The position numbers and the translations under genes are program-made. DNA of 63,646 nucleotides, counting the filler, from Reticulomyxa filosa (taxonomy: Eukaryota > Protista > Foraminifera): NCBI GenBank assembly GCA_000512085.1. It is 18 parts of 18 records of this genome, joined end to end, with 100 filler letters (N's around TTAATTAATTAA, not from the genome) between each part and the next. Parts side by side here need not be neighbours in the genome. Positions count along the whole stretch, not along the records: positions 41,344 to 46,998 come from ASPP01012563.1; 17 more parts are not named here. One strand, given 5' to 3'. Positions 1 to 47,125 of the stretch are shown here, piece by piece. How positions within the stretch are numbered: the stretch's first letter is position 1; every line of letters begins with the position of its first letter. Under the pieces are notes generated by a model, which saw only the letters and a program-made list of their open reading frames with translations, was not told where the DNA came from and ran no database searches.

Positions 1-559
1 TTAATTCTGTCCAATTTTCATCTGATGGTAACAAAATTGTATCTGGTTCAAGGGATAACACCGTTCTATTGTGGGATGTATCATCTGGAAAACAAATTCA
101 ATCTTTAGAAGGTCATTCATATAGTGTTTATTCTGTTCAATTTTCACCTGATGGTAACAGAATTGTATCTGGTTCAAGTGATAAAACCATTCGATTGTGG
201 GATGCATTATCTGGAAAACAAATTCAATCTTTAGAAGGTCATTCAGATCGTGTTACTTCTGTCCAATTTTCACCTGATGGTAACAGAGTTATATCTGGTT
301 CAGATGATAACACCATTCGTTTGCACGGTTTGCTTCCGCTCGTGTTGCAGGCATGTCTGATGTTTGGAATAATTATTTTTCTGCGGATGACAGAAAATGT
401 TTATCAGATTTGCAAGATAAAAAGTCTTTATGGAAATGCATTTGGCAAGGTGGTGTTCAAAGTATTGGTTTGTCATTGAAGGGTAGTACTTGGAAAGATG
501 CAAAAGGTGTAACTCTTTTGCAGATGTCAGTTGTTGAGCAACATGGTGGAATATTTTGA
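1..559 (+). CDS. WD40-repeat protein, 3' part (5' truncated; frame break near 325-355)
   Basis: Tandem 42-aa repeats LEGHS..V.SVQFSPDGNRIVSGS.DKTIRLWD. The C-terminal tail WKCIWQ..LSLKGSTWKD..G.TLLQ is in a second frame (353-559). Confidence 0.9.
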
Positions 560-1739
560 TTTTTTTTTTCATGTGAAAAATGGTTATTTTGGACTTTTTT
601 TCGCTTAAGTATTAATTTTTTGCTTGTATATTTGATTTGAAATGACCACATTGATACCAGTGGAAAATTTTTCATCATACGTAAGACGGACGACAGCTTT
701 GTTTTATTTCTATGCTATTCAATTGGTAATTCTGTCACTTTTTTAAAGCTAACTATAAACTATAAACGGTTAGAAAAATAAAAAATATTATTTTTTATAT
801 TTTGCTTTCATTTTTGACTTATAAATTGCTGTGCATAAATGCTGCGTCATACGCAAGCATTCTGCATTGAATTGTGTATAGCAAACTGGTAATCGATTTA
901 GTTGAATTGATCAAACTAGTTAATATGATTCAAACACACGTTTGCAATTCTACAACATCGTTTATTTACGCTTTTTTATATTTTTGCATGTTCATCCATG
1001 CCGTCAACACTTCTGATGCAACTTTTTTGAAATACAATACCAAAATAACTGCTACATCTGACAATTCTTTGATTTTTCGCAAACGTTGGTCAATAATTAT
1101 AATATTACCTTGGTAGTTTTTAAATGTGGGTTTTTCGTTCCATCCGATATCTTACCTTGTCTTTGGTGGATTCACTCAATCCTACAAAACCTTGGTGCTG
1201 CTTTTTCAAACATTTTTTTTAAAGAGTTTAATTCAGGCGGCGCCCATTAAAACAAACTTTTTCTTTTTCGCTTTTTCCTCTTTTTTTTATTTTTTAATAT
1301 GCCACATGACCTAAAGTTTATTAATTTGTTTACACTCGAGACATATTGCCTTTCATTTTTTGACGTTGTTATAATACTATAATAAAAGTCAGATTGTTTG
1401 AAAAATAATGCAAATAAGTAAATTATTATCGATTATTTCATTATCATTAAAACTGTATTGGATATGACAATTGAATGAGAACAAGTTAATTTTTTTTATG
1501 TTTATCAGCAGTTATGCTTTGTCTATTTTTTTAACAAGCATATACACCAATAACAAGTTTTCTCGAACAATGCATTTATTAATATTTTCAATTATGTCGT
1601 TCCTGGACCGTTTGTGCCGACAGCGGCGAGGTGTCGGACTTAGCACATTTTTTTATGTGAATGTTCTTGCCGCTGACCTATTTGCATCAATTTTCTTTTG
1701 CTAGTTTGTTCGATACGATTTATCTCGGCGGCAGTGGAA

Positions 1740-3930
1740 TATTGGTTTGATATCAACCGCATCTTCAAAATTTTTATTTGGTACTTTAAAAAAAGATGAT
1801 GAAGTTTGTCATTGGATGGCGTGAAATCTTTTTAACATTTTTGACTTCAGTCAATCGCTTGAAAATACTTTCAACGACATCAATCACACTTTTTTTGTCA
1901 CTATCATTATCTTTATTTGATGATGAAGCACTTTCAATAAAATTCAAAGAGTTGAGTTGGTTTTGAACAAAGATTGAATAATTTTATAAATAATTATCCA
2001 TCAAATCCAAAGTATTTGTGGCCTTTTGTTTCAGAGAAAGCACTATCTTATTCTACGTTTGTTGCAATATCAAATTTTTGTTTTACAGCATTCATCAAAT
2101 TGCTGCTGCCATCTTCTTGACGTTCGTCAATTGACTCACACGTTCATACAACCGATTGTGATCGATTGACATATATTGTTAGTCGAGGGAGTCAATTATT
2201 GTGTCAATGTCTTTTTGTACATCATAACAAAACCAGATATCTTGTCGATAATTTGACAGTATTTGCTCGCTGTTCTTTGTTTTATTACTCCTATGATCTG
2301 GAGTCCATCCATCACCAAAATAAACTTTTTGATTTCATCAAATGCTTGATATCTTTGCTTTTCAAACAGGTATGAAATTTTTTGTCTAACTTTTTCGAAA
2401 TATCCAATAATTTGATTTACAAACGACTTGTCAAGTCTAACATGTTCATAAGGCAATTCAAATGCATTCGCCGCTTTCTCCAAAAGAGAATCACTGTCTT
2501 TTTCAAAATATCGACATTATTTCTGTCGAATTTTCAATTCAAACATTAACCACCCTTTTCTCCTTCCCTTTGATTTTTCAATACAGCTTGTTCCTCACCT
2601 GCAACATTATTGAGTTGAGTCAATAATCTACGTTCCAAACCTTTGATTTTTTTATTTATTTATTTTTTTTTGATATTCATGAAAGAGCGAACATGTTCTT
2701 GAAAAATCAAAATCTTTCCAATTTTTTTAAAATTACTTTCGAAACTCCGCAAGTTTATTTTTTTTAATGCATTCCCTTGCTTCATCCACACAATGTACCA
2801 CTCTTTTGACAAGCTTGGTCATAAGAACCACGAAAGTCAGGGAAACGGTCTTGCACTGTGAAACTTTTTTAAAAATGACTTTGTACTGTACTTTCGTTTC
2901 CTTCTGTTTGATCTTCAATTGCATTAATTAAATGTCTCATTTGTTCGTTGACATTTTGAATGAAAGAATCACTACAGATTGCTTCTTTCAAATGACTTTG
3001 TAATTCATTTGCAGACACAAGTTCTTTTATGACTTTTTGATAAGCCAACAACACCATCTTTGCTTAAATGTGGAGATGCAATTTGTTTATTGAATATTGA
3101 TTTGGTATCTTCACATTTTTTTTTTATTCCATTCATTAGTTAACTTTTTCACACAATCATCATATTCATTTTCAATTCGTTGAAAGTTTCAAGACATCAT
3201 TTAATGCTGTGAGTTCATTCAACTTTGTTTTATTGCAAGGTTCGTAATCTCCATTTTGATAAGCCAGGCCAAATTTTTTCTTTGTATTTCTGCACTTGCA
3301 TATAGACCGCTGCTTTGGAGCTTTCGGAAGCAAAGGGTTGGAGGACCTCTCCTGAATCTTTAATGGAAATCCTTTATATCAACAAGTTCTTCCAACAGCT
3401 CTTCTGTTTTTTTTTTTTAACGATATCTGTCAAATGACTTTGGATCTTTGATCGGATCATCTTTGGTGCTCTTTTGAGTCTCTTTGGCATACGCATTCAT
3501 GTATTGCTTTCGATCTTCAGGCATTTTGGTAAACACATACGAACATGTACTAACATAATTTTCGATTGATAGAATAATTGACACTATGATACGAGCCACC
3601 ATTCATTCGATAGCCCAAGGTAGTGTAACTAACCAACACCACAAGGTTTGACACTTTTACAATTTTGTAATGCTGGAATGATTCCCAATTCCATTGGTAA
3701 CATCTGCTTCAGCTTCAGGACCATCTGTGTCTTCAAACCCAGGAGTGCAAATTGATGGGAATAAATTTAATATATCGTAAACGTCCTTTTTGCTCTTCCT
3801 TATTTTTCCATGAAACAAACATATATCTCATTCGCTCTAAAAACTGTCGCAATGTTTGAATAAGGCCTTTGTCTGAAGATTTGGAAAACGCATTACTCAA
3901 ATCTTGACTTACTTCTTTCACTCACGCGCA
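1740..3930 (-). pseudogene. Decayed large P-loop GTPase gene (AIG1/GIMAP-like G domain plus helical C-terminus)
   Basis: Minus strand at about 3530-3790 reads, across frameshifts, RYIKFIPIN / TPGFEDTDGPEAEADVTNGIG / IPALQNCKSVKP / VVLVSY / CSYVFTK (G3- and G4-like motifs). Many short helical ORF fragments follow, broken by stops and frameshifts. Confidence 0.55.
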
Positions 3931-6080: not shown

Positions 6081-7835
6081 ACACAAACTATTTGCTGGAA
6101 TTGGCTGTCCGCTCATGAACATCTATACAATAACAAACAAAGTTATGTTCGTTACTTTTCAAATGACAAAAAAAAATAAACATACCTTACTGTTGTTGGA
6201 TTGCTAACATCAAATTTTTTTTCTATAAAAAACTAACACAAACTTTTTTTTACATTTTTTTTGGGAGGGGATATAAATAAAAATAAAAATATAAACAAAG
6301 TTTTGGTACAACGGGGGAGGGAGAAAGCCTATAACATAACAAACAGTAATATTATAATAAAAGAAAAAATATACTTACATGTAAAACATACTTTTATTTT
6401 TTATTTTGAACACGGGGTGCCTACAACCTCGACTTTATCGTTTTTTTGATGAGTGGTATGTATACATAAAAAAAATTCCATATATTGACGAATATCTATG
6501 TCAGTGGAAACACACAATTACATTAATATATGAAAAAAAAAGTATATATACTACAACAAAACTTTTTTTTAACAATTTTTTTTTTGAATGGAAATTTCTA
6601 TCTAATGACAACACAATCACATATGTATAAGAAAAGAAAAACGAAACATAAATAAAGCAAACCTTTTTTATAATTGAATGCAAATTATATTGTCAGCTCC
6701 ACGTTTTTTTTTGGATAGATATTGTCTTTGTTGATTTCCCCAGTTTGTCTCCAGTTCATGCGCAGCCACATTTTGTCAATTGTGCGATGATTAAGTTTTT
6801 GTCTAGCGCATTGGAACCAACGGACTAATTTGAAGTATCTCATAACTAACATTATTTGTAGTAACAGTTGGAATAATAACAGCCAATGATGATCGGATAT
6901 TGCAGCAATAGTAGTAGTTGTAGATGTTTTGTGGAGACTTCGTATCCTTGCTGATTCAAAACTAAATTTTTCACTGATCATTGTAGTGATCGTGATAAGA
7001 TTATCAGTTTCGGAGCCTGCCATTACTTCAATATCAGTCTATGTCTTTGTGTCATTGGCTATATAATCTCCATTGGTCTTCTCTTTATCGTCATCATGTT
7101 TGTTTTCGACTGCATTATCCAAAAGCGAGTGTTGCGATAAATTTGTGATAATAAATCGCGAGTTAGCATTGGCTCGTCGTTGAATGGCGGAATATTCAAC
7201 GTAGTCTCCAGTCAACAATTGCGACAATGTCTTGTCATTTGTGTGTTTCTGGCCTATGTCAAACTCCTGCTGGACATCGCCATATCCATTTCGCTCCTTA
7301 GCACCGATCTGTGTGTCGATATATCTGCTTTGTATCCGACACATCACACTTGTTTGCAAAATTTACAAAACCTGGTTGCAATTGCAAAAAAAACAACTCA
7401 ATATCCTTTTTCTTCTGTTAAACAAAAAACTCAAAACTTTCATGCAGAATATTCAAAGCGATCCAAAGCAATTTGGAAAATTGTTTCTGCAGCCGAAAAC
7501 GAAGTATTATCTCGGTTTTGCTGCTTGTGATCTCGGATGGCATAAAATTCAAACTAATTTGCAATATTTTTTGCCTCCTTTTCATCATTATGAAAAGTAG
7601 CATGGAAGACTGCGCCAAAATGAGTTTAACTAATTTGATTTGTTGATATACAGTTGAGTGAAGAAACAAAAAAATTAGACGACAAATACTGTATCATTTG
7701 GAAATCATTTAAGTTTTCAAAAATAATATAATTTTGAATTCCAAAAGCATTGTACTCAATACTCAATATTTACAAATATTTATTTACTTCTAAAAAAAAA
7801 AATCACTTCTTTCTCCAATGAAAAAAAAAAGCAAA

Positions 7836-8938
7836 TCAAAAAGTCCCACCATATGTTTCAACAGATGACTTTTGCAATAAGGTTAAGCCTTGTGAATCTT
7901 TCCATGTGCTGCCCTTCAACGACAAAATGCTACCAGCTTGCCAAATGCACTTCCACGATCTTGCATTGTTAGGATTTGTCAGAGATGATTTATCATCTGA
8001 TAAAATAGGACTTGCATCAGATAAAACCCACAATCGAATAGTATGGTCATCAGAACCTGATACAATTTTGGTACAGTCCGGAGACAAATGAACACAGCTA
8101 ACTACATCTGAATGACCCTCTAAACATTGAAGTTGTTTGCCAGATATTATATCTCGAAAATGAATAGTTTTATCTTCGGAGCCACCTACAATTGTGGTGC
8201 CATCAGGCCAGAATTGAACAGATGCCGATCTCTCTAAATGGTCCTGGAAAAATTGAATCTGTTTTCCAGAGAATAAATCCCATATCCGAATCCCGCGCTC
8301 TGAACTAGATATAATTCTTGTACCATCAGATGAAAATTGAATAGTATAAGCATTATCTGAATGAAGTTGTAAACATTGAAGTTGTTGTCCAGATGATGCA
8401 TCCCAGATTCGAATGGTATTGTCAAGTGAACTAGATATAATTTTGGCACCATCAGGTGAAAATTGGACAGTAAAAATACGATTTGAATGACCTTGTAAAC
8501 ATTGAAGTTGTTGTCCAGACGATACATCCCACAGCCGTATAGTCTTATCTTTGGAGCCAGATACAATCCTGGAATCATCTGGAGAGAATTGGGCAGAGCA
8601 AATGGCTTCTAAATGACCTTCAAAAATCCAAAGTTGTTTACCAGAGGAGATATCCAACAATTGTATGATTTTATCTTGTACAATCAATACAAGCTTACTT
8701 TCATATGAAAATCGAGCACAGTCAGCATATTGAAAATAAAGAATTTGTTTACCAGATAACACATCCCATATTATTATGGTGTCAGACGAACTTGATAAAA
8801 TTTTAGTACTGTCAGATGAGAAGCAAAGAGAATTAATAAAAGCCTGGCGTCCTTCTAAAATGTGAAGCTGTTTACCAGATGATACATCCCAGATTCGAAT
8901 GGTATTGCTTGTTGAACTCGCAACTTTAGTGCCATCAG
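7836..8938 (-). CDS. WD40-repeat protein, 5' truncated by spacer; paralogue of the gene at 1-559
   Basis: About 7 repeats of GH..V....FSPDG..IVSGS.D.TIRLWD and the same WKCIWQ..LSLKGSTWKD..GLTLLQ.S.VE..GG.F tail. Confidence 0.93.
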
Positions 8939-41343: not shown

Positions 41344-41378
<35 letters not shown>

Positions 41379-42408
41379 TATATACATGATCTAAACGTAT
41401 AATGAGGTTATCCAAAATAACAATGCTGCCTGGATTGAGTGTTCGTTTGAAATTTTTGACATCTTCCGAATGAAGCAGATATTTGTCTTGATAAGGCCAT
41501 TCTACCGACAGCACTTCGCTGATGGGTTTCTTGAATTGCGCGACGAACTTGAAGAACTCTTCGATAATGTCGAAAGAAAAGATTGTGAGGTTGGGTTGGG
41601 ATTTGTTTTTCAGTTGGTCGAACAAGTGGACACATATGATTTCCAAAGAGTTGTTGGAAAGGTGTTTCTTGTCTTTCACTTGATAGTGCTGCCACATCTT
41701 CAAAAACATGATCGCCGATCGCGTGTTCTTTCCGACCAATTCCTCTCTCATGTAATATACTCGAAGCAATGACAATGATGCACTCATGTTCTTTTCCAAA
41801 AATTTGGTCCATGCTTTATTTGCTCTGCTCATTTGCTTGATATATCTTTGATGTATTGGCGCTTCATCAATCAAATCATTGGCAGCCATTTGCAATTGCT
41901 CTGAAGAAAATGGATATACATGCACATTTTGTTGGGTGTAATGAAATTCACAATATTGTCGTTTTGAAAACGTACATGCTATCACTATATGATATTCCAC
42001 TCCTTTCCATTTTATTCGCAATGACGACTCTGAGTGTCGTCGCACTATTGTATGCGTCCCTTGTTTTTTCATCTTTTCAATGCATTGCTCGATCCACTCC
42101 AAAATGTTCTTATGTTTCTGCTGGAGTAAATCCGTATTGCGGCCAATCAAATCCTTTTTTTTTAGGTGGTGCAAAAATACTAAATATCCGCAAGATACAT
42201 TCGGAATCGCCAGTTTTTTTTGCACACATCCAGAAAGTGTCGCTCCGTAAATACACCCAAATACACATTCTGTGTCGTGAGACGCCCTTTTTTTTTTATC
42301 CAACAAGTTATTTATTAAATCATTTGCAAATATATAATATTTATTCAGGGCGCTAGATGAAGCTACTTCTTGGATCTTCTTGTCCAAAAAATCCTGCTCA
42401 TTCGCCAT
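41344..42408 (-). CDS. 2'-5' oligoadenylate synthetase (OAS)-fold nucleotidyltransferase-like protein with degenerate catalytic residues; 3' end not seen
   Basis: Ordered OAS-like blocks: TLSGCVQKKLAIPNVSCGYLVFL (cf. GGS.GKGT.L...SD.DLVVFL), SLRIKWKGVEYHIVIA (cf. VEFDVLPA), SASLSLLRVYYM..TRSAIMFLKMW (cf. STCFTELQ..LIRLVKHW), LSNNSLEIICVHLFD (cf. YALELLTVYAWE), IVILD (cf. PVILDP). Confidence 0.7.
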
Positions 42409-42671
42409 TATCAACAAAGAGTTGCAATGACTTTTTTAAAAGGGTTTTTTTCAAGTTCTCATATTACTGTTTTTCACAAGATATTGTCCTATGTCGAAAC
42501 TCCATAAATAATACTTTCTATACTTTGAAAAGCGTTTGCATGAGATTAAGATCTTATTAATAAGAAATAGACTGCAACAATGAATAGGCTTGAAAAAGGC
42601 CAACGAATTAAAAGTGACATTAAAAAAAAAAACAAAATAAAATAAAAGTACAATATTATATATGGCTATGA

Positions 42672-43377
42672 CTATAATTGTTCAGTTTTTTCTTGAGGCG
42701 AAGTTAAACTGTAACGAGCCAAACAAAGCTTGCCAACTTTGGAGGCATTGCTTTGGTTATTGGTACTTAAATATTTCCAACCCAAAGAAGCGGCACATTT
42801 GGAGCAACTGACCCAAGCTATCTCATAGGAACCAGTGGTAAATTTTTCAGTTTTCGTAGCTCCCAATGTTAGATTGACAGCACAATTAAATAGATAGCCT
42901 CTTTTTTTTCGGAAATGCTCCTTGTCCAACTTGGTAATTTCGACTTGCAATATCACCCTCCAAACTAATATGTGTTCCACAGTTCTTACATGCGTAGCAC
43001 TTGCTTTTGTCCAATTCTTTCAAAGAAACACAGCTTTTTGCATTTGCATCGGTCTCTTCGATTTTTTTGGCTTTGGCAGTGTCCTTCAAACTTTGTACTT
43101 CTTTTTGCAATGCTTTCGTTTGTTCCAACAACTCCTTATTTTTGCTGTCAAGTGCACACACTCTATCGCGTAGTCTCTGTTTTTCCTCTTTCATTTGTTT
43201 CATTTCCTCCAACATTGCAGTCATTGTCTTTCGGCATTCTTTTATGTTTTTTTCAAGATTCTCCATTTCTTTGAGCTGTGAGTGCCTATTTGACAATTTC
43301 TCAAGTTCCTCTTGGAGGGCTTTCAACTCGTTATTCTGCTCTGGTCCAAAATCGACAATTTGGAAATCGTCTTCCAT
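42672..43377 (-). CDS. Coiled-coil plus Yippee/Mis18 zinc-binding domain protein (one-base frameshift at A8 run 42902-42909)
   Basis: About 110 aa of heptad coiled coil, then CYACKNCGTHI...ASRNYQ, RGYLFN.AVNL, FTTGSYEIAWVSCSKCAASLGWKY...KVGK (Yippee signature). Confidence 0.85.
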
Positions 43378-45281
43378 GTCTTTTCAAACAAAGGGTATAT
43401 TATTAATATTCTATTGAGGGTAATTCCAAAACACAAGTACGCAAAAAAAGCCTAAATACTAAAGAAAAACTCGTTGTGGACTTTAGAATTGACCCCCTCC
43501 CTCTTTTTTTTTTAAAAAAAAAAGACAAAATAAAACTTGGATTTCGACCAGTTTGTAGTGCAAATGAATTGTTTAGAAGTGATTGTTTGTAAAGCACTTT
43601 CAAAGAGTCTGCAAAAAAGCTTGATCCCTTTTTACAGCATCGTTGAAAGTTTAAGAGTTACTTTTCCATTAACTAGCTTGTTTCCAAGTGATTGTAATTA
43701 TTTGGTAACTTGTATCCTCCAATGAACCACTCGAGCAAAAACACCGACAAAAAAAACATGGACTTGCTATCAATTTTTGAAATGACCTCCTTGCACACTT
43801 TGATTGTAATGATGATAACATAAGATCTCATTAACAACGAAAAAAAAAGATGAAACAAAATGCAAGGTGAACACGGATGAGTTATTTGAATGATTTGAAA
43901 AAAATTTTAATTTCGCCTGCTTTGTTTCTCTTGATTTTTGTTATTTGTTAAGCACCACACATGTACAAAAAAAAAAGAGGAAGTGGCTCTTTTTTTTGTC
44001 TGTGTGTTTTTTTATGGTAAAAAAAAATGACCGCAAAGTTGTTGCAATGCTAAATACACAAATAAAAGAGACTGAAATAATTCCAAAGAAGGTCAATACA
44101 TTGAAAAATTTTGTCTATTAATAAGTTTCAATGAACTTTCACACATCTCAAATAAATCTCTTTGTTCCTTAAATTTCCTTTTTGTATTTCCTAGGCAAAT
44201 ATGTATACATTAAATCAAAGTTCTTTTTTTCTCCCTCTGTTTTGCTGGACGTATAATGAGATCACTCCAAATTAAGAGTTTCCTCAATTCATCCTTAGTT
44301 TGTACTGGTTTATATCTCGCACAGCCTCAAATCGAATTTACTAGTACGGTCATTCAATTAACATTGATTTTGCAAGCCGTATCATAAAGACAATAATTTC
44401 CAGAAAATTGTCTATTTTTTATTGCAAGATGTTGATCTAATTTCAGAAAGTCGAGAGTTTTTTCCAATCGATTGTTCCTCATATAATATAACTCATGCTT
44501 TTTTCTAAAATCTTTGCATTGTGTATGAGCTCATCTTTGGTGTGTTGACACTTCAGTCTTATTTGCATTCACTAAAATTTCAGAGTATTTTTTCTTGGAG
44601 TAGCTCGAGATTGTATACTCAAACTCTCTGTCATTTAAATGCTATAAGAATATAAAATGCTCACAAAACAGATTGGAAATGACAAGTTTTTTTTGTACCA
44701 CAACAGCGCCGTTTCACAAATAAAACTGATATTTTTTACGCTATTTCTTTGCGTTGTTCGAGTGAACTATTTTCAAATTCATTTGCGTGTTTATAATATG
44801 CTGACTATATCAAGAGAATTATTTCCTGGAGTCACTTCCAATGAGTCTGCTATATGCAGAGGCTCTGCTTGCCTCTTTTTGAGAAGTTAGTATACAAAGC
44901 TCTGTTTTAGTTGTATTATTTTTATTTCGATTAAAATCCTGATTTGGGAATACATTTATATAGTCAAAATGTGAATTAGTCAATGTTACTTTGATCATGT
45001 CAAAAAAAACACCTGAGTTAATGTGAATTTTTACTTGTTTTAAACGTCAATGATTTGTCAAGCGTAAAGTAAGATAACGTATAGGAAAGGCACGAATTTA
45101 ATTCTTTTGATTACAACTGACAATCGTGTAATAATAATAAAAAGAAGAAGAAAATTTCGCCCTTTGACGGAACAGAAACGTAAAATTTTTAAGAAAAAAA
45201 AAACTACCAAGGAAACAAACTATTCTATTTAATCGAGAAGAAGCTTTTGCGTCTCTTAAAATTCAAAGGCATTATTAGAAG

Positions 45282-46100
45282 ATGGGCAATATTTTAGGTG
45301 ATAAAAAGACAGTGAAGCAAATAATCCGCGAACAGAAGCGAATAATAACTCGTTCAATCCGCGAGTTGGACAGGGAGCTGAACCGAATGAAAAAAGAACA
45401 GGTGAAACTTGTAAACATGAAATTGTAAACTGCAAAAAAAAAAATATACATATATGTAAATGAAAAAAGATATATATAAAAAAAAAAGGCTAAAGCCGAA
45501 GTAGAGATGCGACGATTAGCAAAAGAGGGACAAATACAAGCGGTGCGACATTTGGCGAAAGACATAGTGCGAATGAAAGATAACCAAACAAAGTTTATCA
45601 AATTGAAAGCAGAATTGAGATCATTGTCTGCTCAAATGGACAGTATGGCAGCCACAGCGCAACTGCAAAAATCAATGCGATCAGTGTCTCGAACTATGGG
45701 AATGGTGGCCAATCAAATCAAATTACCTGAATTACAAGTTTTTTTTTTTTTTTAAAAAGGAAGGTATTTTTTTTTTAACCCCCTTTTTTTTTTTTTTTGA
45801 TTGAATCTATTTTTATAGTTTGTAAAAAAAAATAATTGTGCATAGGCGTCATTGCAAAAATATGCAATGGAAAGTGAAAAAATGGAAATGAAACAAGACA
45901 TGATCAACGAGGCGATGGATGACGTAATGGAACATGACACGGACGATGAAGACGAACTGATCCAAAAAGTTATGGACGATGTCGGCCTCGAATGGAATGA
46001 AAAGTTAGTCGACGCACCTGCCAAAGAAAAACAACAAGAGGAAAAAGAAGACGAAGTTGACACTGACTTGCAGGCGAGATTAAATAATTTGAAAAGATAA
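45282..46100 (+). CDS. VPS2: ESCRT-III subunit CHMP2/VPS2, three exons
   Basis: IREQKR...RELDRE, LAKEGQIQAVRHLAKDIVR, SEKMEMKQDMINEAMDD, and the C-terminal MIM DLQARLNNLKR. Confidence 0.92.
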
Positions 46101-47125
46101 TGCGCAATAAATAATACAATAATTATAAATAAATAAAGAACAATTAATCTCTCTTTTTTTAATTTTTTTAAAAAAAAGAAGTTGATTGTTTTCTTTTTGT
46201 TGTGATGCTTTTTTTAGTTGCTTGGTCAATTTGAGTGTTTGAATAATTTCCTACGTCCATCCAACATAAAGATTTTTAAAAAAAATGTGTCTTTCATGGG
46301 CACTTACTTTTTTGGAGCCTTTGGAAAATAAAACTTAGAATTTTGTTGAGACATATATTATAATTTTTTCGTATGTTTTTACTTTTTTTTCCCCCCTCTC
46401 ACAAATTAATCCCGAAACTTAAATAAAGTTAAATTAAACTGAAATCGGTTCAAAAAAGTTTTAATTTTAAATTGAAGAGTTCTATTTCGCAGGACAATTT
46501 GATTGTGATTATCAATGCATTCACAATGTTAGTACAGATATGTTTGTGATCGTTTCAAAGAAGGTTTGTATTTTCGTTTCTATCAAAAAAATTAGAAACT
46601 TACCAGTTTTCAGACTTGTTCAGCATTTTTGAATTTTGGATTAAACAGAAATGTTTGTTATGTTATTAAATTAAAAAATCTAGGAAGAACATTATTTTGC
46701 AAAATTGAATAAAAAATTGTAAAAGTTTGCCATGATTGATTTTTTTTTTAAATGAACAATTTATTTTTTCCAAAAAAAAAAACAAAACGGGAAACTTTTT
46801 TGGTCTTATCTCGATTTTTAGTTTTAGTTCTTTTAGCGTGTTTTTTTTGTTTCCCTCCGTCAAAAAAAACTAGCAAGGTGCTAACAATCACAAGGAATGA
46901 CAACTCCAACTTGCGTTAAGTAGCATTATTTTTTTTCTACGCAACAACAAAAGTGAAAGGAGAGAGAAGGAGGGACAACAAAAAAAAAAAAAAGGGAGNN
47001 NNNNNNNNNNNNNNNNNNNNNNNNNNNNNNNNNNNNNNNNNNTTAATTAATTAANNNNNNNNNNNNNNNNNNNNNNNNNNNNNNNNNNNNNNNNNNNNCC
47101 GAGTTTTCAACAGTGATAATATCAA

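What the first reader, a model, noticed from the sequence alone, without database searches (positions are those of the whole stretch)
41344..42408. Apparently catalytically dead OAS-fold protein in a protist
Seen: a roughly 340-aa uninterrupted frame with five OAS-like blocks in the right order, covering both the NTase lobe and the OAS1_C helical lobe. The G[G]S motif reads SGC, the DxD positions read C-G-Y and the third Asp position reads H. Established: OAS proteins are dsRNA-activated antiviral sensors, and inactive OAS folds (human OASL, DZF domains) act as RNA-binding or adaptor modules. Inference: a pseudo-enzyme nucleic-acid or nucleotide sensor in a lineage far from animals. It has no stops over more than 1 kb, whereas neighbouring pseudogenes are shredded, which suggests purifying selection.
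Basis: partly seen in the sequence, partly recalled or inferred. Interest (0 to 1): 0.85.

Follow-up and report, generated by a model that had tools for sequence, protein, structure and literature searches.

The report
Inactive OAS-like gene in a foraminifer
This is the first exon of a Reticulomyxa filosa gene whose protein has the fold of the animal antiviral enzyme OAS but lacks all catalytic residues; it belongs to a clade of at least 13 such inactive copies that arose once from OAS-like genes still carrying the catalytic motifs.

Summary
On the minus strand, 42408 to 41397 is an intact 337-codon first exon of a Reticulomyxa filosa gene. The rest of the gene lies beyond the assembly gap.

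The single sequence hits nothing in Pfam or PDB. A profile of its paralogues hits only OAS2 (E 4e-7) and OAS1. An AlphaFold2 model (pLDDT 91) matches OAS1 best: VIA Z 19.3, against 17.0 for poly(A) polymerase and OASL, 15.8 for DZF and 15.3 for NRAP.

SGC, C-G-Y and H sit at the GS, DxD and third-Asp positions. At least 13 full-length paralogues (up to 25 counting fragments) share these replacements, with single-residue variants in two. They form one clade (support 100/100).

That clade is nested among paralogues that keep GGS/DGD/D. Two of those are already in a published OAS-superfamily tree (Culbertson and Levin 2023).

Between paralogues dN/dS is 0.22-0.45, and the former active-site strands are the most conserved part. 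So the family is a maintained pseudo-enzyme.

This copy is less certain. Against a near-identical, frameshifted twin locus dN/dS is 0.56, it has Cys at an otherwise invariant Trp, and no RNA data were listed. A sensor or regulator role is inferred, not shown.

It is a new member of a known kind; interest is moderate.

The parts
41397..42408 (-). Exon 1 (337 codons plus 1 nt) of an OAS-like gene. It encodes the NTase N lobe and most of the helical C lobe.
   Evidence: Open frame. It equals database protein P0001 over 329 aa. AF2 model pLDDT 91.4, pTM 0.89. Best structural match OAS1, Z 19.3.
42226..42234 (-). S59-G60-C61, at the position of the G-G-S nucleotide-binding motif.
   Evidence: Profile alignment to OAS1 GGS. 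SGC in 19 of 20 clade-type rows (SGH in P0015); GGS in P0023, P0025, P0026, P0027 and P0036.
42184..42192 (-). C73-G74-Y75, at the position of the D-x-D metal ligands.
   Evidence: Aligned to OAS1 S-D-A-D-LVVF. CGY across the clade (YGY in P0015, CGN in P0021); DGD in P0023 and P0027, ESD in P0026.
41989..41991 (-). H140, at the position of the third catalytic Asp.
   Evidence: The profile column holding H140 aligns with E of ISFEVLAAF in OAS2 domain I. Its equivalence to the third Asp of OAS1 rests on my knowledge of that motif. H throughout the clade; D in P0023, P0025, P0026, P0027 and P0036.
41974..41976 (-). C145, a copy-specific change at a site that is Trp in all 17 other clade members compared.
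41698..41700 (-). K237 in FLKMW, equivalent to the Lys of OAS1 LVKHW. It is retained.
   Evidence: Profile alignment. Conserved in both subfamilies.
41641..41643 (-). E256 in SLEII, equivalent to OAS1 ALELL. It is retained.
41398..41421 (-). V330-I337 (VILDNLII), which I take to correspond to the OAS1 'VILDPADPT' block. It is coding, not intron as in the database model.
   Evidence: In frame in every paralogue locus. Continuous in the intronless relative P0036, which reads IADPIT..N...KF..W. The OAS1 motif itself is recalled from memory.
41344..41396 (-). GT donor (41396-41395) and the start of intron 1 with a (TA)n microsatellite, cut by the assembly gap.
   Evidence: Conserved C|GTTAA or C|GTTTAG junction in all loci. 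Exon 2 follows TTTCAG|GA in L003 and L004.

Best explanation
**Shown.** The window holds exon 1 of a Reticulomyxa filosa gene for an OAS-superfamily protein, with a Pol-beta nucleotidyltransferase lobe and an OAS1-type helical lobe.
- It belongs to a monophyletic, species-specific expansion of at least 13 full-length copies, up to 25 counting fragments.
- In this clade the GS serine and all three metal-binding carboxylates were replaced once by Cys, Cys, Tyr and His.
- These replacements have since been kept, with single-residue variants in two members, and paralogues differ with dN/dS well below 1.
- The clade is nested among R. filosa paralogues that still carry GGS/DGD/D, which are presumably real synthetases.

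**Inferred.** Without carboxylates the protein cannot carry out two-metal nucleotidyl transfer. It is therefore a pseudo-enzyme.

**Mechanism I think most likely, about 35-40%.**
- The former catalytic cleft is the most conserved part of the protein and keeps the two Lys residues equivalent to OAS1 K66 and K213. I propose it still binds a ligand: RNA, a nucleotide, or an oligonucleotide.
- The protein would then act as a non-catalytic sensor or regulator beside the active paralogues, in a fast-turning-over, defence-like gene family. This is comparable to OASL, OAS2 domain I, or the inactive mouse Oas1 paralogues.
- Its output would pass through a C-terminal extension of unknown fold that lies outside this piece.
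For: **Kinship and fold.**
- The family profile hits human OAS2 (E 4.1e-7) and OAS1 (E 0.18), and only these align over the NTase and C-lobe blocks.
- The AF2 model has pLDDT 91.4.
- Foldseek's top hit is porcine OAS1, E 2.6e-6.
- VIA Z: OAS1 19.3, 19.0 and 18.9; OAS3 domain I 17.1; poly(A) polymerase 17.0; OASL 17.0; DZF 15.8; NRAP 15.3; CdnC and CdnD about 15.
- In the ESM Atlas the three nearest clusters are all 100% OAS1_C, TM 0.68-0.69.

**Loss of catalytic residues and its history.**
- Motif table across 39 homologues.
- In the tree the dead clade has 100/100 support and a stem of 0.95.
- P0023 and P0027 are in the published OAS-superfamily tree and alignments.

**Constraint.**
- dN/dS is 0.22-0.26 for the window against five other dead-clade loci, and 0.21-0.45 among the others.
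- Mean major-residue frequency is 0.86 and 0.82 in the former active-site strands, against 0.49-0.75 elsewhere. K237, E256, Q63 and G60 are shared with the catalytic-type paralogues; K64 is nearly invariant within the clade.
Against: - No binding or expression data exist, and no RNA run was listed.
- This copy against its twin locus gives dN/dS 0.56. The window lineage carries as many derived residues as the frameshifted twin (22 against 17), including W145C.
- dS between paralogues is near saturation (0.9-1.8), so the dN/dS values are rough.
- The C-terminal part of the gene is missing from the piece, and its fold could not be predicted (pLDDT 42).
- The heterodimer test with an active-type paralogue gave no answer.
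- Pfam does not recognise the protein.
Confidence: 0.72

Rival explanations
1. This particular copy is a decaying duplicate, a recent or incipient pseudogene. This could be true even if the clade as a whole is functional.
For: - A twin locus (L003) with near-identical flanks carries three 1-nt deletions in the same exon.
- The pairwise dN/dS is 0.56.
- The window lineage has 22 derived residues against 17 in L003, including C145 at a Trp invariant in 17 of 17 others and Q116 at a Glu found in 13 others.
- The adjacent Yippee-like ORF is broken in the window.
- No RNA run was listed.
Against: - All 337 codons are intact, as are the start codon and the splice donor.
- All clade-defining residues are retained.
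- The assembly is a fragmentary draft. Some of the frameshifts sit in or next to homopolymer runs and may be sequencing errors.
- dN/dS of 0.56 is still below 1.
Confidence: 0.2
2. The clade is still an enzyme. The Cys/Tyr/His-lined cleft would bind a different metal (for example Zn or Mn) or carry out a different reaction.
For: - The former active-site strands are the most conserved part of the protein.
- The replacements are nearly uniform across the clade (C61, C73, Y75, H140) rather than scattered.
- The Lys residues equivalent to OAS1 K66 and K213 are kept.
- The long stem branch followed by a radiation suggests a change of function rather than decay.
Against: - To my knowledge every characterised Pol-beta-fold nucleotidyltransferase needs the acidic triad. 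Here all three residues are gone, and the first Gly of the GS motif is also changed.
- No coordinates were available to test whether the Cys and His residues could form a metal site.
Confidence: 0.06
3. It is a housekeeping NTase-fold protein (NRAP/Utp22, poly(A) polymerase, a TENT, or the DZF proteins NF45/NF90) rather than an OAS relative.
For: These folds all appear in the hit lists with Z 14-17. Features of the C-terminal extension of a paralogue weakly resemble Nrap_D5, at 0.78, which is below the chance mark.
Against: - OAS1 leads by about 2 Z units, with the lowest rmsd among these full-length matches (3.2 A over 269 residues).
- The sequence profile aligns with OAS proteins alone over the NTase and C-lobe blocks.
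- Sister paralogues fall in the OAS superfamily in a published phylogeny.
- Dozens of fast-diverging copies are not what a housekeeping gene looks like.
Confidence: 0.02

Closest known systems
OAS1 (human and porcine 2'-5'-oligoadenylate synthetase 1)
   Same: - The two-lobe fold: Z 19.3, rmsd 3.2 A over 269 residues.
- The order of sequence blocks: the GS loop, the beta-2 strand LV(V)F, the third-Asp strand, LxxLxKxW, LE(L/I)(L/I), and (OAS1 motif recalled from memory) VILD.
- The Lys residues equivalent to K66 and K213.
   Different: - S63, D75, D77 and D148 are replaced by C, C, Y and H.
- Sequence identity is about 13-15%, and Pfam's OAS1_C model does not hit.
- Full-length paralogues carry a C-terminal extension of about 200-300 aa of unknown fold.
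Catalytically inactive OAS modules: OASL, OAS2 domain I and OAS3 domain I. Also the mouse Oas1 paralogue cluster, whose inactive members are cited from my own knowledge.
   Same: - An OAS fold kept without the catalytic triad.
- The best profile stretches fall in OAS2 domain I, whose motifs read SDGT and E.
- OASL scores Z 17.0 and OAS3 domain I 17.1.
- The expansion into many paralogues, most of them inactive, resembles the rodent Oas1 cluster.
   Different: - The loss was independent and happened in a foraminifer.
- The replacement residues differ and are nearly uniform across the clade: Cys, Tyr and His.
- No ubiquitin-like domains were detected.
- The inactive unit is a separate gene, not a domain fused to an active one.
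R. filosa OAS-like proteins RFI_14454 (P0023) and RFI_15844 (P0027), placed in the OAS superfamily by Culbertson and Levin 2023 (PMC10732462)
   Same: They come from the same genome and are true paralogues: about 30% identity, E 7e-41 and 2e-27. They share the exon 1 end and the same splice donor position.
   Different: They keep GGS / DGD / D. The window's clade was not among the five R. filosa sequences in that study.
DZF domain of NF45/NF90 (ILF2/ILF3)
   Same: An NTase-fold pseudo-enzyme without the catalytic triad, solved with ATP, CTP and UTP bound (PDB entries 4at8, 4atb and 4at9 in the hit list).
   Different: The structural score is lower (Z 14.4-15.8) and there is no sequence-profile match. 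No heterodimer evidence was obtained here.

Membership tests
OAS superfamily (OAS1/2/3/OASL type CD-NTases) | Two-lobe fold: a Pol-beta NTase lobe plus an OAS1_C-type helical lobe, with OAS as the best structural match | tested here: met
   AF2 pLDDT 91.4. Foldseek top hit 4rwn. VIA Z 19.3 for OAS1 against 17.0 or less for non-OAS folds. Atlas top clusters are OAS1_C.
OAS superfamily (OAS1/2/3/OASL type CD-NTases) | Significant sequence similarity to OAS proteins or to Pfam OAS1_C (PF10421) | tested here: inconclusive
   The single sequence has no Pfam hit at E up to 10 and no OAS hit in PDB. The family profile hits OAS2 at E 4.1e-7 and OAS1 at 0.18, and only these align over the NTase and C-lobe blocks.
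OAS superfamily (OAS1/2/3/OASL type CD-NTases) | Phylogenetic placement inside the superfamily | tested here: inconclusive
   Paralogues P0023 and P0027 are in the published OAS-superfamily tree. The window's clade nests among these paralogues in my tree. I built no tree that includes animal or bacterial sequences.
Active 2'-5'-oligoadenylate synthetase | G-(G/S)-S motif and the Asp triad (DxD plus D) | tested here: not met
   SGC / CGY / H in the window and, with single-residue variants in two members, throughout its clade.
Active 2'-5'-oligoadenylate synthetase | dsRNA-activated synthesis of 2'-5'-linked oligoadenylates | not testable with these tools
   This needs a biochemical assay.
OAS-fold pseudo-enzymes (OASL, OAS2 domain I, OAS3 domains I and II) | The OAS fold retained with catalytic residues lost, under selective constraint | tested here: met
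   Fold. Loss of residues. dN/dS 0.22-0.45 between paralogues. The cleft strands are the most conserved part. Constraint on this individual copy is weaker (dN/dS 0.56).
OAS-fold pseudo-enzymes (OASL, OAS2 domain I, OAS3 domains I and II) | RNA binding or adaptor function | not testable with these tools
   No binding data exist. The complex prediction with P0023 gave no answer.
OASL | C-terminal tandem ubiquitin-like domains | tested here: not met
   The long paralogues P0006, P0007 and P0020 have no ubiquitin or other Pfam domain. The C-terminal fold could not be predicted.
NRAP/Utp22, poly(A) polymerase, DZF | Best structural or sequence match to that family | tested here: not met
   Z 15.3 (NRAP), 17.0 (PAP) and 15.8 (DZF), all below OAS1 at 19.3. 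None has a profile hit.

The most novel reading that the evidence does not exclude
The dead clade may be a repurposed OAS fold rather than merely inactive. Its strictly conserved Cys/Cys/Tyr/His-lined cleft could form a new metal site, or a receptor pocket for the oligonucleotide signal made by the catalytic paralogues P0023 and P0027. The uncharacterised C-terminal extension would then act as the effector. That would make the family a self-contained synthetase-and-receptor immune signalling system in a foraminifer, built from one fold.
Probability: 0.08. Interest if true: 0.8.

Novelty: new member of a known kind. Interest (0 to 1): 0.42.

Why it matters
OAS-type CD-NTases are argued to be ancient eukaryotic immune proteins (PMC10732462), but I know of none outside animals that has been studied functionally.

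This locus shows that one free-living foraminifer holds two kinds of OAS-like gene:
- a few with the catalytic motifs intact;
- a much larger clade, of single origin and selectively maintained, in which the catalytic triad is replaced by Cys, Tyr and His.

This parallels the repeated birth of inactive OAS modules in vertebrates (OASL, OAS2 and OAS3 inactive domains, and the mouse Oas1 paralogues). It offers an independent system for asking what a dead OAS fold is kept for.

It also corrects gene models. Several database proteins of the family end at a splice donor that was read as a stop codon.

Tried and rejected
- **Pfam scans.** The window protein and 19 relatives gave no OAS or NTase family at E up to 1-10. 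The only hint was a faint NTF-like hit in P0034.
- **Single-sequence PDB search.** Only chance EF-hand and heparanase hits.
- **RNA evidence.** No run was listed, so read laying could not be used.
- **C-terminal extension of the long paralogues.**
  - The region search found only the query itself.
  - AF2 gave pLDDT 42.5, which is unusable, so no fold search was made.
  - Atlas features pointed to Nrap_D5 at 0.78, below the chance mark.
- **Profile search of the 5.8-billion-protein set.** It was capped at 8000 candidates and returned only known members.
- **Complex prediction of P0023 with P0001.** No answer, with score 0.00. This is not evidence either way.
- **Neighbours of the one non-Reticulomyxa relative (TARA contig L001).** Only a weak SPRY hit; the organism is unresolved.
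- **Chance open reading frame.** Rejected: about 38 homologues and a confident fold.
- **Housekeeping NTase.** Rejected; see the rival explanations.

Full report
**What is in the sequence**

The usable piece (41344-46998) is a 5.7-kb contig of the foraminifer Reticulomyxa filosa. The encoded protein is identical to a database protein from a 5,655-bp contig, and all close homologues are annotated R. filosa.

On the minus strand an ATG at 42408 opens a frame that runs without a stop to the edge of the piece, 355 codons in all. Comparison with eight paralogue copies in six other loci shows where exon 1 really ends.
- Every copy reads in frame up to '...(V/I)(I/L)D..(I)IR'.
- Each then has C|GTTAA or C|GTTTAG.
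- In the twin locus L003 and in L004, an acceptor TTTCAG|GA lies 130-150 nt downstream. It restores the Arg codon and continues 'NIE(E/S)KF(K/R)QW...'.

Exon 1 is therefore 42408..41397 (337 codons plus 1 nt). The rest of the gene lies beyond the assembly gap.

The database model P0001 stops 8 codons early. Models such as P0002 and P0003 end at 'IIR' because the donor GTTAA reads as a stop codon.

**Is it an OAS fold?**

The single sequence gives nothing. It has no Pfam family even at E 10, and only chance hits in PDB.

An exhaustive phmmer search and a word-indexed search together found 38 homologues. Of these, 37 are from R. filosa and one (P0036) is from a TARA Oceans metagenome.

A profile of 14 diverse members hits four PDB sequences at E up to 10.
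- Human OAS2 scores E 4.1e-7, with the N-lobe and C-lobe stretches in order.
- Two porcine OAS1 sequences score E 0.18-0.19.
- The fourth is a 91-residue protein named PSK, at E 0.38 over 47 residues, which I take for chance.

An AlphaFold2 model of the 329-aa protein, built with the 39-sequence alignment, is confident: pLDDT 91.4, pTM 0.89. It has the expected order of elements.
- N-terminal helices.
- Strand, GS loop, strand.
- A long helix.
- Three strands.
- A helical C lobe.

The structural searches agree.
- Foldseek ranks porcine OAS1 first, at E 2.6e-6.
- Re-alignment with VIA-align gives these Z scores:

| Match | Z |
|---|---|
| OAS1, three structures (best: rmsd 3.2 A, 269 residues) | 19.3, 19.0, 18.9 |
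| OAS3 domain I | 17.1 |
| Yeast poly(A) polymerase | 17.0 |
| OASL | 17.0 |
| OAS2 | 16.0 |
| DZF (ILF2/ILF3) | 15.8 |
| NRAP | 15.3 |
| CdnC, CdnD | about 15 |
| cGAS | 14.8 |

- The three nearest ESM Atlas clusters are all 100% OAS1_C, with TM 0.68-0.69.

That test is not met.

**The catalytic positions**

The profile alignment puts family 'GGS...s-e-g-d-LVF' on OAS1 'GGS...S-D-A-D-LVVF'. It puts the strand 'lefdilvaf' on OAS2 domain I 'ISFEVLAAF'.

In the window these positions read as follows.
- S59-G60-C61 at the GS motif.
- C73-G74-Y75 at the DxD motif.
- H140 at the third Asp.

Across the 39 homologues, 18 of the 20 clade-type rows that cover both motifs read SGC/CGY, and all that cover the third position read H. 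The two exceptions differ by one or two residues: SGH/YGY in P0015 and CGN in P0021.

The other paralogues differ.
- P0023 and P0027 keep the canonical GGS / DGD / D.
- P0026 has GGS / ESD / D.
- The TARA protein P0036 has GGS / NGD / D.
- P0025, P0028, P0029, P0030 and P0034 are partly degenerate in different ways.

Several other OAS features are retained in the window.
- K237 of 'FLKMW' matches the Lys of OAS1 'LVKHW'.
- E256 of 'SLEII' matches OAS1 'ALELL'.
- Q63 and G60 are shared with the catalytic-type paralogues, and K64 is nearly invariant within the clade.
- The 'VILD' block is present. I match it to OAS1 'VILDPADPT' from memory.

**History of the family**

I built a maximum-likelihood tree of the 22 members that cover the core. 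The SGC/CGY/H genes form one clade with 100/100 support and a long stem of 0.95. The branching inside the clade is star-like. The clade is nested among the catalytic-type and partly degenerate paralogues. The tree was rooted only at its midpoint, on the very long branch of P0036.

So the triad was lost once, and the dead form then multiplied to at least 13 full-length copies. Counting fragments the number reaches 25. Three copies lie on one 9.7-kb contig.

**Selection**

Nei-Gojobori dN/dS between exon 1 copies of the dead clade is 0.22-0.26 for the window against five other loci. It is 0.21-0.45 among the others. dS is 0.9-1.8, which is close to saturation, so these values are rough.

Within the clade the former active-site elements are the most conserved parts.

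| Residues | Region | Mean major-residue frequency |
|---|---|---|
| 53-81 | strand, GS loop, strand | 0.86 |
| 119-160 | three strands and loop | 0.82 |
| all other segments | | 0.49-0.75 |

This argues that the cleft is still used, and not only that the fold is kept.

**This copy in particular**

Contig L003 is a twin of the window locus, with a Yippee-like gene followed by the OAS-like gene. The flanks are nearly identical, but exon 1 is not.

| Region | Differences |
|---|---|
| Upstream of the Yippee-like gene | 0/119 |
| Yippee-like gene | 9/706 (1.3%) |
| Intergenic spacer between the two genes | 12/263 (4.6%) |
| OAS-like exon 1 | 68/1003 (6.8%) |
| Start of intron 1 | 0/52 |

- For exon 1, dN is 0.061, dS is 0.11 and dN/dS is 0.56.
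- L003 also carries three 1-nt deletions.
- Polarised against the family, 22 derived residues are in the window and 17 are in L003. The window's include C145, where 17 of 17 others have Trp.
- No RNA run was listed.

I therefore give about 20% to the window copy itself being a decaying duplicate. The divergence restricted to the exon is unexplained. It could reflect gene conversion from other paralogues, diversifying selection, or an artefact of the draft assembly.

**How it most likely works**

- **Shown:** an OAS-superfamily fold, the loss of all catalytic carboxylates, a single origin, and maintenance of the clade.
- **Inferred from what is established about Pol-beta nucleotidyltransferases:** no two-metal catalysis is possible.
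- **My preferred mechanism (about 35-40%):** a non-catalytic ligand-binding module, for RNA or for a nucleotide or oligonucleotide. It would act as a sensor or regulator alongside the catalytic paralogues, in the way OASL, OAS2 domain I or the inactive mouse Oas1 paralogues do. Its output would pass through a C-terminal extension of about 200-300 aa seen in P0006, P0007 and P0020.

I could not characterise that extension.
- It has no Pfam domain.
- AF2 gave pLDDT 42.
- The Atlas lead was weak.
- A heterodimer prediction with P0023 gave no answer.

**Comparison with what is known**

Culbertson and Levin (PLoS Biol 2023, PMC10732462) report OAS-like proteins in 8 of 12 eukaryotic supergroups. 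Their supplementary trees and alignments include five R. filosa proteins. Two of them are our P0023 and P0027, matched by EukProt identifiers P025644 and P024262. None of the five belongs to the dead clade.

A full-text search for 'Reticulomyxa' together with 'oligoadenylate' found no paper.

The kind of protein, an OAS-fold pseudo-enzyme, and the presence of OAS relatives in this species are therefore already known. Three things are new:
- the large dead clade of single origin;
- its nearly uniform Cys/Tyr/His replacements;
- the corrected gene structure.

**Verdict**

This is a new member of a known kind. Interest is 0.42.

Noticed in passing
window 42672-43377 (-); L003:120-827: A Yippee/Mis18-like gene (Pfam PF03226, E 1.4e-7) with an N-terminal coiled-coil region lies upstream of the OAS-like gene. 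In the window it is split into two overlapping frames by a 2-nt difference next to an A-run, near 42905-42913. The twin locus L003 has an intact 235-aa ORF. So each locus has one broken and one intact gene, or else these are errors of the draft assembly.
   Followed up: partly
window 45507-46100 (+): Two ORFs match the N- and C-terminal halves of Pfam Snf7 (E 8.5e-7 and 1.2e-3). This is an ESCRT-III (CHMP-type) gene, apparently with an intron of about 100 nt between them.
   Followed up: partly
window 41397-42408 against L003:1114-2125: Exon 1 of the OAS-like gene is 6.8% divergent between two loci. Most of the flanks are 0-1.3% divergent; the spacer between the two genes is 4.6%. The cause is unknown: gene conversion, diversifying selection, or an assembly artefact.
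   Followed up: partly
L005 (ASPP01004733, 9.7 kb): 534-1448 (-), 2702-3712 (+), 6547-7546 (-): Three dead-clade paralogues lie clustered on one contig. One has an in-frame stop in the aligned region and another needs a frame change. This looks like a local array with gene turnover.
   Followed up: partly
L001:9241-11268 and L002:2184-4211 (TARA Oceans and another marine metagenome): This is the only relative found outside R. filosa: an intronless 675-aa protein with GGS / NGD / D, on a contig of about 22% GC. Its neighbours have no Pfam domains apart from a weak SPRY hit. The source organism, a protist or a giant virus, is unresolved.
   Followed up: partly
L004:2828, L006:3314, L007:6065, L009:3670 (exon 1 ends): The conserved splice donor C|GTTAA reads as Arg followed by a stop codon. 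Several database models (for example P0002 and P0003) therefore end at 'IIR', and others skip the VILD block. The family's annotated proteins are truncated or mis-spliced.
   Followed up: yes
P0020 (R. filosa, 504 aa): A source names it 'Casein kinase II regulatory subunit', but it has no Pfam support for that name. Its N-terminal half is the C lobe of a dead-clade OAS-like protein, and the rest is the family's C-terminal extension.
   Followed up: partly
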